Assembly (NCBI RefSeq): GCF_003918875.1
Contig: NW_025766880.1
Coordinates: 930,001-994,000 of the forward strand
Origin: Haliotis rubra
Lineage: Eukaryota
Direction: 5' to 3'
Length of the DNA: 64,000 bases
The translations under genes were made by a program, and so were the position numbers. Of this stretch, positions 17,939-38,400 are shown piece after piece. The notes beneath the pieces were generated by a model. The model saw only the letters and a list, made by a program, of their open reading frames with translations, made no database searches and had not been told where the DNA came from. Positions within the stretch are counted from its first letter, which is position 1. Each line of letters opens with the position of its first letter.

Positions 17939-17978
17939 CACCTGATGAAGGAGTAAGCATATACTCGGAAACGTTGTG
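17939..17978 (+). ncRNA. Minimal type I hammerhead ribozyme motif (Penelope-type)
   Basis: cac-CTGATGA-ag-GAGTA-agcata-TACTC-g-GAAA-CGTT-gtg: canonical core boxes, a 5-bp stem II, palindromic ACGT stem III and a 3-bp stem I. It lies within an insert of about 130 bp (17929-18056). Confidence 0.65.
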
Positions 17979-19436
17979 TTCCTCGTAATGAAGAAGCTGA
18001 TATTCATAAAACTCTCTTTGTTATGTGTACCACTTCTAAACACCATTAAAGACCTGAAGGACAGAACTCATGGGAAATCCTCGCCTAAAGCGCTAGCGCA
18101 TATCCCCTGTTTGTACAATAAACAGCCCACGCGGTGACCCACTTCACAGTGCTGCTCAGATACAGACGACGCGTCTCGTATGGAGCTTGGCCTCAGCTAA
18201 CATGGCGAACATTCAGGTATATTACTTCATGGGAAGCCCGCCATGTCGCGCAGTCTTCATGACAGCTAAGGCTCTTGGTGTACCACTTGAGTTGAAAGAA
18301 CTCGGCTACTTCAAAAAGATCATCTTCAGCCAGAGTATACAAAGGTGAGTGAATGCGCCACAGGCACCAGGCTAGTGTCCCCGGGCCGTCTCTTAGTGTC
18401 CCCGGGCCGTTAGCATAAGAAAGTGGTAAGTTAATGTTAATGTATGGCACTTACGACTATCTTAACGCTAAGAGAGCTTCGAAAATCTAGGCCCAGAAGT
18501 CCATCACTGGCATCAGTGGATCAACAACACTTTATTCGGCGTCTAAATGTGTAATAATATAAATGCAGCAACGGTCAGGCAGCATCCGCAAGGCGACAGT
18601 CAGTTCACAATGCCTAGTCTTAAAACAGGAATTTATCGTATAAACTACCGACTGTCAGGCAGCCCTATATTACGGTACATGTATGGTCGGCCCGCAGTAT
18701 TCAGCAATGTTAAACCTCCGAGACCGACCGGCCATACCCTAAATTTAATTACACGCTGCTGTTATTTCATTTATATTGACAACACTCTGAAGATTTGGAG
18801 TGAGTGAGTTGGGTTTTACACCGCTTTTAGCAATATTCCAGAAATATTAATGCGGAGAACACCAGAACAGGGCTTCACACATTATACCCATGTGGGGAAT
18901 CGAACCCGGGCCTTAGGCGTGACGAGCTACTAGGCTACCCTTGATACACCATCAAATGTGTTGTCACAGCGACCATTGAAAAACATGATAATGCTATACT
19001 TTGAAATAGATTCGTCCACTGAACCGTAAATTTTGTTTGTTTAAAGACATTAGCACGAACTGACCTAAAATCATTCCACTATCAAAATTTATGACGGCAC
19101 ATACGTAATCGGACTGCGACTGCGAAGTCGAGAAATGGTAAATCATTCGCCTGACAGCTGACCTGTTTGTGGTACGGCAGCCTGGCCAAGATAACCCAGA
19201 TTTATGGGTCAGGATGCCGATAGTTTTGCCAATGAAATCAGTTCATATAAAATTATGTGCGAAGATAACGGTTTAAGAACTGTGCTAACCTCCCGTAGTC
19301 TATATGTGAGCAACAAGTAGACGAATGATAAGTGTCCTTCGTATTCCACACAGCTTGTAATCTCTGATAATTCCAGTGAACTAGCAGCGTTTCAGCTTAA
19401 CGTGGAAGCGATGGAAGTCCTACAATGTTTATCCAC

Positions 19437-19948
19437 TTTCTTTGTACAGTACAGATTCTAGTACTTTTGTTGGGTTGAGTCCCATCCGGGATTCGAACCC
19501 AAACCCTCAGAGTCAGGCACCTAATCACCAGCACACAAAGTCAGACGCCAGCACACAAAGTCAGACGCCTAGACCGCTCAGCCGACGCGGCTTCCACAAA
19601 TATAATATAACAAATGTTACATTTGACTACTTTCTAAATGGCATTGTGTATTTCATAGCTTTCGGCCGTGGGAGCCGTGCCAATAAACACTTATCAGAGG
19701 GGTACAGTCCGCAGTCTAGACTACCAGTTGTCCGACTTCCATTTTGTGGAAGCCGCGGTGGCTGAGCGGTCTAGGCGTCTGAGTTTGTGTGCTGGCGATT
19801 AGGTGCCTGACTCTGAGGGTGTGGGTACGAATCCCGGATGGGACTCAACCCCCCAAAAAGTACTAGAATCTGTACTTTACAAAGAAAGTTTAATCCCAAA
19901 TAACAAATGTTACATTTGACCACTTTCTAAATGTCATTGTGTATTTCA
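19437..19948 (-). mobile_element. Composite element: inverted tRNA-like arms, a 50-bp direct repeat and a decayed hammerhead-like motif, with 13-bp TSD
   Basis: AATGTTTATCCAC at 19424-19436 and 19949-19961; arms 19435-19600 and 19742-19889; repeat blocks 19606-19655 and 19900-19948. Confidence 0.75.
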
Positions 19949-19988
19949 AATGTTTATCCACAAACTTGGGAGCACTCTTCAATGTAGA

Positions 19989-20096
19989 GGGGCGGTGGGG
20001 TAGCCTAGTGGGTACAATGTGTGAAGCCCATTTCTGGTGTATCCCTCCGTGATAATGCTGGACTATTGCTGAAAGCGGCGTAATACTTAACTCACT
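19989..20096 (+). mobile_element. Internally deleted SINE family A copy
   Basis: 16-bp TSD CACTCTTCAATGTAGA at 19973-19988 and 20097-20112; the B-box segment is missing. Confidence 0.85.
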
Positions 20097-22814
20097 CACT
20101 CTTCAATGTAGATGATGAGAGGTAAACTCCAAAAGTTCAGCGGAAGGGCGTTTACCCCAAGGCCTCCCTGTTATCATTCAGTTAGGGCAGGGTTTGAATT
20201 TTATATTTAGTCTTTTTATGATCTTTAATTCTTTCTATCAAATGACCTGTTTTCACCACTACTTGTTTTAAATGTTCGTTCAGAATGTCCAGAGTGTTTG
20301 CGTCGCAGAATCAAATGCAAGGAAAATAGCGAAAGGTCACTGTGATGGTTTAACGTTTTGATTATTCACTCAATCTGATAAACTGTATGTTTCAGATAAA
20401 CCCGGATCAAATCGTCCCAACAATGATAGACGGAGACTTCATACTGGGGGAGAGGTAAGATCTTATGATCGATGTCAAGGTAACTTTGCGTCCACCTATC
20501 TCCTGTAACAATTAAGCACTGACTAAAGTTAAAATTAAAAGGAATCGAAAAAAAATTATCATTACAAATGGAACACTCGGGCTAAGTAATGCAGTCTTAA
20601 CGATTTCTGAAACAGTTACATACTTCAATCGATCCGGCACATAGAAATGTATGTGGTCACCATGCAGGTCATCATGAATATTGTTAGGTATCAATTCTCA
20701 TGTTCAAACACAATGTTAATCTGAATGAACCTACAATGACACACCAAAATACAGTGGCAGTACAAATTCAATGTTTATAAAATGCAACGGCAATTAAATA
20801 CATAAGCAGTGATATTGACAATAAGAGACAATGAAGGTAATATGTACCTTGCTACAACACTGATGCCCAGCTCGTCTTCTTTGCATGGATGACAAAGGAG
20901 ACGCCAATTTAACAGAACAAGTTCTGCTTGTCAAGTTGGTAGCAGGTTATTCACTATATACTGGTCCATATTTGAAAAACTATTATTGTCAACATGGAAA
21001 TTATATCACCAACAGGTTGTTAGCATTGTTATAAGTTTAGGAAGCCAGATATAGTGGAGTTTGCATTATAATGTCCACGTTCTACAACACCTCCCTAAAA
21101 AATCAATAACAGGTGTAAAACCAGTCCATATAGGAATTGCTGATGATTCTTGAACTTTGTGGGAGATGCTGTTACTTTATGATCGGTGTGGGAGCTCTCC
21201 GCGGGTAGCGAAGATGCATATTAAGACGACTCTATACTTTTAATTCCACAGCCGAGCTATCATGCGCTACCTGGTGGGGAAGTTTGGGGGTGAGGACAAC
21301 AGCCTATACCCCCGGGACCTCCAGAAGAGGGCGGAGGTGGACCGTCTACTGGACTATGATCTGGGGGTCTTCTTCAGAGTCATTTTGGAGGATCTGGTAA
21401 GTACACAAGCATCGTTACATTGTTCGTGTTGAACAGGCTGTATTCATGCAATATTTCTGAGTCAAATAATGTGTCATAGCTTTATGGGAAAGAAAGTGTT
21501 CAAACTGCCATCTAGTATTAAACGATAACTAATAGCTCTGCTTCTTTAAATGACTGAGCATTTGTGAGAAGATAAATCTATGATCATTCACCGAGTATAT
21601 TGTTTGGAAAATCCCCCATTCACGCGTTCAGTACTATGAGTTCCTATTTCAGTGGCTGCCATTCAGAGACAGAACTCCGAAGACAAAAGAACATGAAGAG
21701 AAAATCATCAAGGTTTTCACACGGATTGATACACTGCTCAAGGATAAGAAGTTCCTGACCGGAGATAACATCACTATTGCCGACTTTTCGATAGTGGCTG
21801 CCTTTACAACCGAGCTAGTCTATGAAGGGGATATGTCCAAGTACCCAAATGCCATAGCATGGTACAAGAGAATGCAGGAATTACCATACTTCAAAGAAGT
21901 GAATGAGAACTTTTATGAATGGGTGACCAAAGTGAAGACGCTTCACGCTGAAAAGTCATAAAGTATGAAAATATAGGTCCGAGTTGCAATGCTTTTGCAA
22001 ACACCTGATGTTATGATTTTCAGTATTGCATTCACATTATTTCACCGTCATATTGCCAGTATATTCTGATTTGGAAATTTGTTATTGACGTTTTTTGACC
22101 ACATACCATGAGTAATGTCAGATTTGAAAGTTATTATATCAAAATACGAAAAACGTAATAAATTATCTCATGCAATGTAACTGATGCACCGTTACAGTTA
22201 CTTCATATTTCCGTCATTTGGTATGACCCGGTGCTATATGTTCCCATATCTTGCCTTTGCGTGCATTTGCCATTGGTTGGGCACCGTTACCTGGCATCAT
22301 CACGACTGGATAGAGATTCATTAACACATTCTCAGGAAGAACTTGGAATCATGCAGCTGCCATTCCCAATGATAATGGAAAGGAATCGGCCTCTTCTATT
22401 TTCTACTCTCTGGAACAACCTTTCTTGTACTAACTATGCAAAACAGGATTTTTTGTATCGTGAATTTATCAAAATGGTCAATGTCATATATCTAAAAAAA
22501 TACACATGAATGTTTGGGATTTAATTCCATAAAGAAGGGGTGCTCATAACCTTTTTTCAGGTAATATGTTTATTGTATGTCTCAATTCATTTATCAATAA
22601 ATAATCACAATTATACTCATGAACTTTTTATGATTGTCAATACAGAATGCCTTTTAGAAAGTGATCAAAACTAACAAATCTTATGTTTGGAATCAAACTT
22701 TCTTAGTACGGTACAAATTCAAGTAGTTTAACGGGCTAAGTTTCGTCCAAATCGCCCACACAAAGCCAGCGATCTAACCCCCTTTATAACAGTACGGTGT
22801 CTTCTTAGTGGCTA

Positions 22815-35413: not shown

Positions 35414-38400
35414 ATGTCTCCTCCGGTAGATGGAACGTCTCTTTCGAAGAAGTGGACTGCTGTGAAGGTGGTCGTCGATGACTATATGTCCACGGCGACT
35501 GTGCATGGATTCAGCAGGGTCATCGGGAAACAGTTGTACTTTGGGCGAAGGTGAGTTTTCATGAGCCACTGATTGTGGTAACGCATTTTTAAATTTCAAT
35601 ATTCCCATGTGACTAAATTTAGTGGTAATTCCATCCTATTTTCGAACGCAAACTATCCTCAGTATTTTCGATTGTCTTCAGAAAAAGTTGAGGTATGTCC
35701 TACTTTTGTTAGCTTTGCTTCAATAATCGTACAATTTGCGCAGTTACTAGTACGTACGTACACTTCATTCAAGGTTTGTAGCCCTCACAGCGTAATTTGC
35801 ACAATCACTGTCTGTTGCACGACGAAGGTCGAGCATAGTTACGTGTATGTTACAAATATGTTATTTATCATTATAGGATATCTATATTATTATAGGACAT
35901 TTATATAACACACATGTCCACGCAACTAGTACATGCTCAAGGCGCTGGTATTTTGTCCCTCGATCATTGGATGTCAATTTCAACGGCACATCACATTATC
36001 AATCTCAACTCCCGGGGGTTCATGCAACTCTTGCAGTCACTAGGCCCACCGAGCTATTGCAACTTTACCCATTCACAGCTGGGTGGACTGGGATACATAG
36101 TCACAGTACTTTGTCCAAGTACCCTCAACTGTCCCTAGTATGGTGGTCAGTTGTTGGCCATTAATAGCCTGTTTTTATATTATTTATTGTCCAAATAGTG
36201 CTATTAGTTTTAACTTCACATGCTAGTTTTAATTTGAACTGTGATGGTCTAGTTGTTTTACTGTGCTTGAACGACAGGTTTTATTAAACATACAAATTCA
36301 TTATTTGAACATATTCATGTTGCCACCATCTGGTGATTTACCAACGGAGAAACAAATAAAGGAACACAGGAATATTCAAGTGTTCCTTTAATATTTTCTA
36401 GTTTTCATCACCAGCTTTGAACAGCGCTGTGGTGATGGAAAAATGGAAAATAATAAAGGAACGCTTGAATTTTCCTGTGTTCCTTCATTTGTGTCTCTAC
36501 GTATATTTAACCATAATAAATGCTATGTTAAGTGGTCTATGTACCATCCACTCTTTGAGAAGCCTTAGCTTTACTTGATATGCATGTGTGTATTGTCACC
36601 AGCAGCATTTTGTCACTGTTCGTGTGAATCTTGGTATTGCATGTTCATACTGTACGTAGATCTACTCTTTGTATGCATGTGTGTGGCAGTGGTAACTTAT
36701 CCACAAAAAAACCCACCTGAATCCTTTCTTGTGTCTTTTCCTCAAAAGAGGGCAAGTATCTCCCTGGCCCCTTGTCCCCACCTGTAACAGGGATTCAGCA
36801 ATAAAATATTAAATACAAAAACCAAGTACAGATTCAAGTATTTTGGGTGCGATTAGGTGTCTGACTGTGGGTTCAAATCTCGCATGTGACTCAACCCAAA
36901 CAGTACTACAATATTTACCCTACTGATGCACTGGTATTGGTGTTGACATTTATATTTCATGAACCCAAACTGTTTTTGAAGGATATGTGGCGCGATGATA
37001 TAGTTACTCGTGTAAAGTAATATGTCCTTTCCCTGTGACCTAGTCGTCTATTGCGATGTAAGCCGTCGTGTCTCTTAGGCCGGTCAGAAAACTATGAATG
37101 TGGCTTTGAACCCCACATTCGTTTTCAATGTTTCGAGTCGTGCCCATGATGTTGATCACTGGATTGTCTCGCCCGCACTCGATCATTTACACACCGCCGT
37201 CATTTAGCTGGAATATTGCTGGGTGCGGTGTAAAACTAGACTCACTCATTCACTTACTGGAGTCGTGTCAGCTTGATCAAACATGTGGTTGACGCCTAAG
37301 TCTGGATTTTATCCGCTTTCTCAAGCTAACACTCTCATTCATTCCTTTATTACAGTGTCAAGACCATTTCTGGTGTCCCCCGCCGTGATATTGCTGGAAT
37401 ATTGCTAAAAGCGGCGTAAAACCAAACTCTCACTCATTCACTCTTTCATTACATTATTCAGGTTCTTTTGGCTCCTGGTCGTCCTTGGCGCCGGTGTGGC
37501 TCTGGCTATCCAGGTGTACGCGGAGTTTGAAGTCTACAATGCCCGACCTACGTTAATCAAAGAACAGTTCAGGGACATTGTGGACATGGTCAAAGAGCTG
37601 CCGACCATTAGCCTCTGCCCCTTGAAAGGTTTTGAAGGAATAGTGAACCACTCCTCCCCTTCGCCTCTCACTCGAGAAGAGATGGTTATGCAGAGATTCG
37701 CCTACCCATCATCACATATATCAGAGAGTCTTTTGTCCAGTGTCCACATTAAAGTGTACGGATGGGACGATACTGGACATCCCGACACGCCAGGACGTCA
37801 GACGTTTCTCAGTCCATTTAGATTACAGGAGCTGTCTGCGAGTCGCTTCTTGAACAGGTCATGGGAGATAAGTGATGGTCTACCAGCTTTTTTTAATGAC
37901 TCAGATTCTGGAGAGGTGTTGAAGATCCTTGCTAGATCAAGCCGTGTTCTGGATGTGAAGGGCTGCCCAAGAAAGATACAGTCATTGTATGATCTCCCAT
38001 GTTGCAGCAACTTCTTCTCAGAAGTCTTTACAGAGACGGGAGTGTGCCAGACCCTCAATATGACAGCACTTATCAAGGAAGGCAAACGGAAGGGTTTCTT
38101 CGCTGAGAACAGGTTCCTAGTTGTCGTTGATGCCATGATGCAGACAGACTTAACGATGTTCACAAACGTGAAAGGAATTCAGGTACGAAGTTTATGAACT
38201 ATTCACGGCAACGGACGTCAGGTACAGCTGTAATCAGTCTTTAGTTCAGGATATGAATAGTTCCGGATAAACACAAAGCGAGATCCAATCTCAACATTGT
38301 ATGTTTTTTCATTACATTGATGGCAATAGGCATTCATTGAATGACAAACCGTGCAAGTTACGACTAGTAAAAGCTCAATTCTACCATGGCTACGTGAAAT

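What the first reader, a model, noticed from the sequence alone, without database searches (positions are those of the whole stretch)
19424..19961. Composite tRNA-headed inverted-repeat retroelement whose end coincides with a hammerhead cleavage site
Seen: a 512-bp insert between 13-bp direct repeats. On the minus strand it reads block X' - inverted tRNA-like arm - spacer - hammerhead-like motif - block X - tRNA-like arm. The arms carry A box TGGCTGAGCGG and B box GGT(T/A)CGAATCC. The motif (19690-19646) reads gtgttta-TTGGCAC-GGCT-cccac-GGCC-GAAA-GCTA|tgaaatacac, with a palindromic AGCT stem III. The element's 5' terminus (19948) begins at tgaaatacac, exactly the base after the predicted CUA cleavage triplet. 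A collapsed relative lies at about 36823-36915. Known: Penelope-like elements and non-LTR retrozymes carry minimal hammerheads, and PLEs often show inverted ends. Inference: a non-autonomous Pol III/ribozyme-processed element (a SINE-retrozyme hybrid) mobilised by a Penelope RT. The core in this copy is degenerate (UUGGCAC versus UUGACAA), so activity is unproven.
Basis: partly seen in the sequence, partly recalled or inferred. Interest (0 to 1): 0.8.

Follow-up and report, generated by a model that had tools for sequence, protein, structure and literature searches.

The report
tRNA-SINE inserted Penelope-style, no hammerhead
The 512-base insert is one copy of an abundant tRNA-headed jumping element whose two-armed, partly tandem shape is the scar left by Penelope-like retroelements, and the proposed hammerhead ribozyme lacks the catalytic core and lies on the wrong strand.

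Summary
The structure is real. A 512-bp insert (19437-19948) lies between perfect 13-bp target duplications. It has two inverted tRNA-like arms, a 56-nt direct repeat (block X) and an 87-nt spacer (MID).

It is one copy of a dispersed ~300-bp-unit family (X-MID-ARM), with thousands of sites in this genome. The + strand is the sense strand: the 3' ends are fixed, the 5' ends are truncated, and the A/B boxes lie on it. Copies carry 10-15-bp duplications, head-to-tail partial multimers, an inverted 5'-truncated copy upstream, and a 37-38-nt extension on one end only. Resident Penelope-like elements (PLEs) show 5' truncation, the inverted upstream copy and a one-ended extension; partial tandems are documented for PLEs in the literature. 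The inner junctions differ between copies, so the two-armed form is made at integration and is not a composite family.

The hammerhead claim fails. All 33 sampled units read UUGGCAC-like, never CUGAnGA or UUGAnAA. The motif is antisense to the retrotransposed strand. The "cleavage-site" end is the element's slightly ragged 3' terminus. Real PLEs here keep canonical CUGAAGA...GAAA cores.

No lending PLE was identified, because tail similarity to two PLE families is not significant. Earlier agents of this scan reached the same reading for this family on other DNA of this genome.

The parts
19424..19436 (.). Left target-site duplication, AATGTTTATCCAC
   Evidence: Exact 13-bp direct repeat, family D3.
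19437..19600 (-). Inverted 5' arm. It is a full tRNA-like ARM module read on the minus strand, with its outer end at the ARM 3' end and no block X. It holds a 20-bp tandem duplication at 19528-19567.
   Evidence: Inverted repeats I1-I3 and direct repeat D2. It is 83.5% identical to the family consensus.
19601..19655 (+). Upstream partial copy (pLTR-like). Block X from about position 10 to 61, ending ...GTGTATTTCA.
19656..19742 (+). MID spacer. Its first ~35 nt are the complement of the claimed hammerhead-like string. Its 3' half is about 70% complementary to the 5' 43 nt of ARM. It ends in a T run.
19646..19690 (-). Claimed hammerhead-like motif. The core reads UUGGCAC. It is judged not to be a ribozyme.
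19743..19888 (+). Direct ARM module. It is a tRNA-Leu/Ser-like SINE head with the A box at 19759-19769 and the B box at 19824-19834, followed by about 50 nt of body.
   Evidence: (weak tRNA-clan hit).
19889..19948 (+). Terminal block X. The core end ...ATGTT lies at 19911, and the 37-nt one-sided extension spans 19912-19948.
19949..19961 (.). Right target-site duplication
22639..22729 (-). Solo 5'-truncated copy of the same family (ARM 3' end plus block X), about 83% identical to the consensus.
36824..36924 (.). Diverged twin-arm fragment of a related element. A short inverted ARM 3' piece is followed by a direct ARM piece, with no block X.

Best explanation
The insert is a single retrotransposition event of an abundant, non-coding, tRNA-headed SINE. 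Its ~300-bp unit is ARM (tRNA-like head plus body), then X (61-nt tail), then MID.

The sense strand is the window's + strand. An internal Pol III promoter (A and B boxes) would start transcription at the ARM 5' end. A T4-5 run at the end of MID would stop it (inferred).

Reverse transcription is primed at the target nick from a fixed point in block X. That point is either X23-25 or X61. The result is a fixed 3' end, a variable 5' end, and a 10-15-bp target duplication.

The enzyme often continues onto a second template, which gives the upstream partial copy or whole extra units. A second cDNA is primed from the other target strand. That cDNA gives the inverted 5'-truncated arm, so both 3' ends face outward.

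This scar set is described for Penelope-like elements (PLEs), and most of it recurs in the RT+GIY-YIG PLEs of this genome. The family most likely borrows a PLE enzyme (inferred; the lender was not found).

The minus-strand hammerhead-like string is a chance look-alike inside MID. It has no catalytic core.
For: Family and unit:
- 153 scored matches from 6431 first-look candidates.
- 300-bp tandem period in L012.
- 3423 exact sites of a 20-mer of block X.

Sense strand and scars:
- The 3' end ...GTGTATTTCA is constant, and 5' starts vary inside the ARM 3' part.
- Target duplications of 10-15 bp flank at least 9 independent copies, including whole composites (L002 14 bp, L006 12 bp, L016 11 bp) and a 4.2-unit array (L012).
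- The outer end of the inverted copy is regularly at X23-25, and the other end at X61. This gives a 37-38-nt extension on one end only, on either the direct or the inverted arm.
- Inner junctions differ in every composite copy, so each arose independently.
- In the first 100 sites listed in contig order there were 12 divergent pairs closer than 600 nt, 0 convergent pairs and 6 direct pairs at about 258-299 nt.

PLE comparison:
- Published PLE features are 5' truncation, partial tandems, an inverted 5'-truncated copy and a 30-40-bp one-sided tail (PMC8557442).
- Resident PLEs have RT+GIY-YIG ORFs.
- They show 5' truncation, inverted copies, and a 37-45-nt extension on one end only.

No hammerhead:
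- The core heptad in 33 units is TTGGCAC 27, CTGGCAC 2, TTGGCAT 2, CTGGCAT 1, TTGGAAC 1. None is CTGANGA or TTGANAA.
- In the minimum-energy fold the supposed core pairs with the supposed cleavage triplet, forming a plain hairpin.
- Real PLEs here keep CUGAAGA...GAAA-CAUG-UU|GGAG on the sense strand.
Against: - No autonomous partner was found. The SINE 3' region shows no significant similarity to the 3' ends or extensions of the two PLE families examined (p 0.02 to 0.35 depending on scoring). BLAST against 30 PLE loci found nothing.
- Those PLE families insert into (TA)n microsatellites. The SINE does not.
- Variable duplications, 5' truncation and 5' inversion also occur with LINEs (twin priming).
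- No RNA data could be obtained. Transcription, strand and RNA ends are therefore inferred.
- Rfam's lack of a hammerhead hit is uninformative, because Rfam also misses the genuine minimal PLE hammerheads.
Confidence: 0.68

Rival explanations
1. A LINE-dependent SINE. The inverted arm arises by twin priming, as in L1 5' inversions, and the tandem units arise by template switching of a LINE reverse transcriptase.
For: Variable 10-15-bp target duplications and 5' truncation are also LINE hallmarks. No PLE with a matching tail was found. A neighbouring, clearly LINE-type SINE with a 14-bp duplication shows that LINE machinery is active in this genome.
Against: There is no A-rich or simple-repeat 3' tail. 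Partial tandems and outward-facing twin arms are systematic (12 divergent versus 0 convergent pairs). Two fixed termini lie 37-38 nt apart, with the extension on one end only. This matches the resident PLEs and the published PLE description, and is not described for LINE insertions.
Confidence: 0.17
2. The element is a SINE-retrozyme hybrid whose minus-strand RNA is cut by a variant hammerhead after GCUA, which defines the element's end and allows circular RNA.
For: The string offers a 4-bp stem next to GAAA, a palindromic AGCU, a UA dinucleotide and a possible helix I. The predicted cut coincides with the X61|MID boundary, where roughly a thousand copies end. Tandem units resemble non-LTR retrozymes.
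Against: - Four of seven core positions differ from CUGAnGA. Allowing the U3-A8 covariation, A6 and A9 are still replaced. Both are invariant in hammerheads (established mutational knowledge).
- None of 33 units has a better core.
- The motif is antisense to the strand with fixed 3' ends and the Pol III boxes.
- The end is ragged by 0-2 nt, and a second terminus exists at X23-25.
- Twin-arm copies without MID are common.
- Neighbouring units of one array differ by 6.6%, which does not fit copying of a single circle.
- A second register with CUGAUAA leaves 9 unpaired nt before helix II.
Confidence: 0.03
3. Two ordinary SINE copies that landed head to head by chance, or a DNA-level foldback element or MITE.
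For: The two arms are only 93-97% alike, and one carries a private 20-bp duplication.
Against: - A single perfect 13-bp duplication brackets the whole 512 bp.
- The same holds for independent composites elsewhere.
- Orientation is always divergent, 12 to 0.
- The duplication length varies from 10 to 15 bp, unlike DNA transposons.
Confidence: 0.03

Closest known systems
Penelope-like element insertion architecture and non-autonomous PLE dependents (for example MRC1 of Chlamydomonas); Craig et al. 2021, PMC8557442
   Same: 5' truncation, partial head-to-tail tandems (pseudo-LTR), an inverted 5'-truncated copy upstream, a 30-40-bp extension on one end only, and multicopy head-to-tail insertions of non-autonomous forms. 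All were found here.
   Different: This element has a tRNA-derived Pol III head. It shows no demonstrable 3' similarity to the PLE families sampled and no microsatellite target bias. Published non-autonomous forms share their 3' ends with autonomous families.
Animal non-LTR retrozymes (Cervera and de la Pena 2020, PMC7229834; Li et al. 2026 preprint, 10.64898/2026.07.22.740005)
   Same: Short non-coding units in tandem, target duplications longer than 4 bp, and a proposed dependence on PLEs.
   Different: Retrozymes are defined by a type I hammerhead in every unit and by circular RNA. This family has no hammerhead core on either strand and carries a Pol III promoter instead.
Classical tRNA-derived SINEs of molluscs (Matetovici et al. 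2016, PMC4758252)
   Same: A tRNA-like head with A and B boxes, a short non-coding body, and variable target duplications.
   Different: Those SINEs end in simple repeats or A-rich tails and insert as single units. This one ends in a unique sequence and inserts as partial multimers with inverted arms.
L1 twin priming (5' inversion); from my own knowledge, Ostertag and Kazazian 2001
   Same: An inverted 5' segment and a direct 3' segment lie within one pair of target duplications.
   Different: In twin priming the two segments are different parts of one RNA. Here the two arms repeat the same sequence, each starts at a fixed site in the tail, and extra tandem units occur.
Schistosoma Sm-alpha, a SINE-like repeat with a hammerhead; from my own knowledge, Ferbeyre et al. 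1998
   Same: A short tRNA-related retroposon.
   Different: Sm-alpha has a canonical, active CUGAUGA...GAAA hammerhead on its sense strand. This element does not.

Membership tests
Hammerhead ribozyme (minimal type I, PLE type) | Conserved CUGAnGA box (C3 U4 G5 A6 N7 G8 A9) | tested here: not met
   The window copy and 27 of 33 units read UUGGCAC. The other 6 are single-base variants, and none is CUGAnGA or UUGAnAA. A second register with CUGAUAA has A8 and 9 unpaired nt before helix II.
Hammerhead ribozyme (minimal type I, PLE type) | GAAA box next to helix II, a UH cleavage dinucleotide, and helices I and III | tested here: inconclusive
   GAAA, a 4-bp GGCU/GGCC stem, AGCU and UA are present. 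In the minimum-energy fold, however, UGGC of the 'core' pairs with GCUA, giving a plain hairpin.
Hammerhead ribozyme (minimal type I, PLE type) | Match to a hammerhead covariance model | tested here: inconclusive
   No Rfam hammerhead hit at E up to 10 in the locus or in 6 young copies. Rfam also misses the genuine PLE hammerheads used as a positive control.
Hammerhead ribozyme (minimal type I, PLE type) | Self-cleavage activity | not testable with these tools
   Needs in vitro transcription of a unit or dimer.
Non-LTR retrozyme | Tandem units of about 150-1000 bp with target duplications | tested here: met
   300-bp period, 4.2 units flanked by a 10-11-bp duplication in L012.
Non-LTR retrozyme | Type I hammerhead in every unit | tested here: not met
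Non-LTR retrozyme | Unit-length circular RNA | not testable with these tools
tRNA-derived SINE | Internal Pol III A and B boxes in a tRNA-like head; short and non-coding | tested here: met
   The A box matches 10 of 11 consensus positions and the B box 11 of 11 in the family consensus. There is a weak tRNA-clan hit of 18.8-21 bits. ARAGORN calls no tRNA.
tRNA-derived SINE | 3' tail shared with an autonomous partner | tested here: inconclusive
   No significant similarity to two PLE families or to 30 PLE loci. Other PLE and LINE families could not be fetched.
PLE-dependent non-autonomous element (PLE-type insertion) | 5' truncation, partial tandems, and an inverted 5'-truncated copy within one target duplication | tested here: met
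PLE-dependent non-autonomous element (PLE-type insertion) | 30-40-bp extension on one end of the insertion only | tested here: met
   X24-61 (37-38 nt) is present on either the direct or the inverted arm, never both. Resident PLEs behave the same way, with 37-45 nt.
PLE-dependent non-autonomous element (PLE-type insertion) | Autonomous PLEs present in the same genome | tested here: met
   At least 140 GIY-YIG matches. ORFs with RVT_1 plus a C-terminal GIY-YIG domain. Copies are 95-100% alike.

The most novel reading that the evidence does not exclude
The family is a ribozyme-less, Pol III-driven analogue of a retrozyme. Unit-length RNAs would be defined by an unknown, non-hammerhead processing or initiation signal at the two fixed break points. 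These are X23-25, next to the palindrome AACATATGTT, and X61|MID. A Penelope-type reverse transcriptase would then copy the RNAs by template jumping or rolling circle. The 300-nt unit itself would be a fossil of an earlier twin-arm PLE insertion, because the MID 3' half is complementary to the ARM 5' half. If so, a 300-nt RNA would give a direct handle on the still unknown PLE integration mechanism.
Probability: 0.1. Interest if true: 0.8.

Novelty: new variant of a known kind. Interest (0 to 1): 0.45.

Why it matters
SINEs are textbook parasites of LINEs. I found no description, in the paper library searched, of a tRNA-headed SINE that carries the full scar set of Penelope-like elements.

If the partnership holds, it extends the known PLE dependents, which are retrozymes and elements such as Chlamydomonas MRC1, to Pol III-transcribed SINEs. 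It would also offer a short, abundant substrate with two sharply defined start sites for studying how PLEs make their tandem and inverted insertions.

Tried and rejected
- **Rfam scans.** Scans of the locus, the whole window and six young copies gave no ribozyme of any family. The positive control failed, because Rfam misses the genuine minimal PLE hammerheads. I therefore give this negative no weight. A whole-genome RF00163 search also returned nothing, with its own warning.
- **Reads.** There is no evidence on expression, strand or circles.
- **Lender search.**
  - BLAST of the element against 30 PLE loci found nothing.
  - Smith-Waterman against PLE 3' ends and extensions with shuffles gave p 0.02, 0.21, 0.35, 0.09 and 0.21.
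  - A pattern for 'hammerhead boxes plus SINE tail' hit one place only, which is a SINE copy with an inverted MID piece.
- **B-box relic idea.** I tested whether the GAAA of the motif is a relic of an inverted B box. It is not supported (p 0.64).
- **Sense-strand relic idea.** I considered whether the sense-strand ARM/X boundary (CUAAGAA...AACAUAUGUU) is a decayed PLE hammerhead. The resemblance is by eye only and no better than shuffles.
- **Negative control.** I tried the neighbouring SINE as a control for twin-arm frequency. It was uninformative because the listed sites are too sparse a sample of more than 100,000.
- **Own covariance model.** I aligned the PLE hammerheads but built no model. 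Helix II is poorly defined in them, and the test would only restate the sequence comparison.
- **Rfam microRNA hits.** MIR2619 and mir-9457 are hairpin artefacts of the inverted arms.
Full report
**1. Observation**

AATGTTTATCCAC occurs at 19424-19436 and again at 19949-19961, bracketing exactly 512 bp.

On the + strand the insert reads as follows:

| Part | Coordinates | Strand |
|---|---|---|
| Inverted tRNA-like arm | 19437-19600 | - |
| Block X, partial | 19601-19655 | + |
| MID spacer | 19656-19742 | + |
| Direct tRNA-like arm (ARM) | 19743-19888 | + |
| Block X, terminal | 19889-19948 | + |

- The arms pair over 85, 55 and 34 nt at 93-97%.
- The left arm holds a private 20-bp tandem duplication at 19528-19567.
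- A and B boxes are present in both arms.
- ARAGORN calls no tRNA. Rfam gives only a weak tRNA-clan hit of 18.8 bits. The head is tRNA-derived, not a tRNA gene.
- The minus-strand string at 19690-19646 reads as quoted.

**2. The family**

- A search of the window's own genome (1.38 Gb) gave 153 scored matches out of 6431 first-look candidates.
- The commonest form is not the 512-bp composite. It is the right-hand 345 bp, X-MID-ARM-X, at 92-94% identity.
- This form is often repeated head to tail with a 300-bp period. L012 has 4.2 units.
- A majority consensus of 23 such copies is 94.6% identical to the right part of the window copy.
- A 20-mer of block X has 3423 exact sites in the genome, with none for the reversed control.
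- The window holds two more pieces of the family or its relatives. One is a solo 5'-truncated copy at 22639-22729. The other is a diverged twin-arm fragment at 36824-36924.

**3. Which strand moves**

- On the + strand nearly all copies end at the same point, ...GTGTATTTCA.
- The left ends vary. Direct copies start 12 to 51 nt before the end of ARM, or an inverted segment is attached there.
- Target duplications of 10-15 bp flank at least nine independent copies. Among them are whole composites (L002 14 bp, L006 12 bp, L007 11 bp, L009 10 bp, L016 11 bp, L021 11 bp), a simple copy (L019) and the 4.2-unit array L012.
- A fixed 3' end, a variable 5' end and variable duplications are the signature of target-primed reverse transcription of a + strand RNA.
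- The A and B boxes lie on that same strand. A T4-5 run at the end of MID sits just upstream of the next ARM. A Pol III transcript ARM-X-MID is therefore plausible. This step is inferred, not shown.

**4. The composite is made at integration**

- The inner junction between the inverted arm and the direct part differs in every composite copy examined. The inverted arm stops at AAGCC, at TTTGTGG, at CCATTTTTGTGG, or up to 30 nt inside MID.
- It joins block X or the ARM 3' end at different points, sometimes with a few bases of microhomology. These are therefore independent events, not descendants of a composite master.
- The outer ends are regular. One arm ends at X61. The other ends at X23-25, just after the palindrome AACATATGTT, in 9 of 10 independent composites.
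- The window copy is the exception. Its inverted arm stops at the ARM 3' end.
- The 37-38-nt stretch X24-61 is thus an extension present on one end only. That end can be the direct arm (L002, L006, L016) or the inverted arm (L003, L009, L029). In L012 and L030 it is on neither end.
- An unselected sample supports this. In the first 100 sites of the 20-mer, listed in contig order, I counted 12 pairs in divergent orientation closer than 600 nt. There were no convergent pairs, and 6 direct pairs at about 258-299 nt. Under random nesting, divergent and convergent pairs would be equally likely, so 12 to 0 has a probability of about 0.0002.

**5. Comparison with Penelope-like elements**

- Craig et al. 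2021 describe PLE insertions as follows. They are strongly 5'-truncated and often in partial tandems that form pseudo-LTRs. They often have an inverted 5'-truncated copy next to the upstream pseudo-LTR. A 30-40-bp tail is often present at only one end of the unit.
- The same paper reports non-autonomous forms that make multicopy head-to-tail insertions (PMC8557442).
- This genome holds many PLEs. There are at least 140 GIY-YIG matches, ORFs with RVT_1 followed by GIY-YIG, and copies 95-100% alike with varied 5' truncation points.
- Their insertions show inverted copies at the 5' side (L039, L054, L056, L057). They also carry a family-specific 37-45-nt extension on one end only, either direct or inverted.
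- The SINE reproduces this scar set in detail. That is the basis for inferring a PLE lender.

**6. The lender was not found**

- BLAST of the element against 30 PLE loci gave nothing.
- Local alignments of the SINE's 3' region with the 3' ends and extensions of the two PLE families sampled are no better than shuffles, with p from 0.02 to 0.35 depending on scoring.
- The two PLE families are not alike in their own extensions either.
- Both sampled PLE families sit in (TA)n microsatellites. The SINE's targets are ordinary sequence.
- Further PLE families could not be fetched.
- PLE dependence therefore rests on architecture alone. A LINE with twin priming remains a live rival.

**7. The hammerhead claim**

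- The proposed core is UUGGCAC. Against CUGAnGA it differs at C3, A6, G8 and A9.
Both are invariant in hammerheads, by established mutational knowledge.
- In 33 units from 28 loci the heptad is TTGGCAC 27 times. The other six are single-base variants, and none moves toward either core.
- In the minimum-energy fold of the 61-nt region, UGGC of the 'core' pairs with GCUA of the 'cleavage site', giving a simple nested hairpin (-17 kcal/mol, z -2.7).
- A loose descriptor scan finds one other register, CUGAUAA...GAAA. It has A8 and nine unpaired nucleotides before helix II. The same scan recovers the true PLE hammerheads.
- Those true hammerheads read CUCC-CUGAAGA-(7-9 nt)-GAAA-CAUG-UU|GGAG on the sense strand, about 40 nt from the core 3' end. 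Helix I covaries in a third family. Canonical cores are therefore present in the bona fide PLEs of this genome.
- Rfam's silence on the SINE is not evidence, because Rfam also misses these genuine minimal hammerheads.
- The motif lies on the antisense strand of the element.
- The end that 'coincides with the cleavage site' is the 3' terminus of the sense strand. It is ragged, running 0, 1 or 2 nt into the TA of MID. It is one of two regular termini.
- Genome-wide, the tail 17-mer is followed by TAG (internal, continuing into MID) 413 times, and by something else with a non-A third base 629 times. Ends do cluster there, as the fixed start point of reverse transcription would predict.

**8. Against a rolling circle on one RNA**

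In L012, units 1 and 2 are 99.7% alike and units 3 and 4 are 99.7% alike. Units 1 and 3 are only 93.4% alike. Neighbouring units therefore came from different templates, or from a heterogeneous master followed by local duplication. This fits template switching better than many rounds on a single circle.

**9. An internal fold**

- The Pol III-phase unit ARM-X-MID folds into a long rod (-105 kcal/mol, z -4.2).
- The reason is that the 3' half of MID is about 70% complementary to the first 43 nt of ARM (p 0.012).
- The unit may itself descend from an older twin-arm insertion. This is a suggestion only.

**10. Literature and earlier notes**

- The paper library holds non-LTR retrozymes as PLE dependents (PMC7229834 and preprint 10.64898/2026.07.22.740005).
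- It also holds mollusc SINEs with LINE-type tails (PMC4758252).
- I found no tRNA-headed SINE with PLE-type insertions.
- Earlier agents of this scan examined other copies of this family in the same genome and called the organism an abalone. They reached the same reading, including rejection of the hammerhead, and they also found no lender.
- I checked the points I reuse on my own data. Their agreement is not independent evidence.

**11. Limits**

- The consensus I built is of the non-coding SINE only.

**12. Verdict**

The ribozyme reading is rejected. The Penelope-style mobilisation is supported by architecture, but the partner is unproven.

Noticed in passing
L046:1360-1400 (minus strand), L054:5963-6002 (minus strand), L041:1205-1250 (minus strand): Resident Penelope-like elements carry a canonical minimal hammerhead, CUGAAGA...GAAA-CAUG-UU|GGAG, on the sense strand about 40 nt from the core 3' end. 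Helix I covaries in a third family. Rfam hammerhead models do not detect them.
   Followed up: partly
L031-L060 (for example L039:1080-1320, L054, L033): The two PLE families sampled sit in (TA)n microsatellites. They carry a family-specific 37-45-nt extension on one end of the insertion only, either direct or inverted.
   Followed up: partly
L012:1472-2717: A 4.2-unit array inside a 10-11-bp target duplication has an A-A-B-B pattern. Units 1=2 and 3=4 are 99.7% alike, and units 1 and 3 are 93.4% alike. A paralogous locus with the same flanks (L026) holds about 2 units.
   Followed up: partly
L012:1646-1944 and window 19700-19790: The 3' half of MID is about 70% complementary to the first 43 nt of ARM (the A-box region). 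The Pol III-phase unit therefore folds as a long rod (z -4.2). It may be a fossil of an older twin-arm insertion.
   Followed up: partly
window 19528-19567: A perfect 20-bp tandem duplication (CCAGCACACAAAGTCAGACG twice) is private to the inverted arm of this copy.
   Followed up: no
window 19975-20114: A different, about 110-bp tRNA-like SINE ending in (ACTC)n lies between 14-bp duplications CTCTTCAATGTAGA, 27 bp from the insert. A 20-mer of it has more than 100,000 sites within 3 mismatches in the genome.
   Followed up: partly
window 17943-17973: A CTGATGA...GGAAAC string, the subject of another first-stage note. No Rfam family reaches its gathering score anywhere in the window.
   Followed up: no
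L003, L004, L005 (contigs C2496, C888, C35): The same composite insertion, with the same 12-bp duplication and flanks, appears on three contigs. This points to a segmental duplication or uncollapsed haplotigs.
   Followed up: no
L051:3512-6703: Next to a GIY-YIG match, all six reading frames stay open for 1-3 kb. This indicates stop-poor, low-complexity sequence and not a real 1064-aa ORF.
   Followed up: no
window 19568-19775; L017:1850-1917: Rfam microRNA-precursor hits (MIR2619 at E 0.0023, mir-9457 at 59 bits) are hairpin artefacts of the inverted arms. Such loci could still yield hairpin RNA if transcribed.
   Followed up: no
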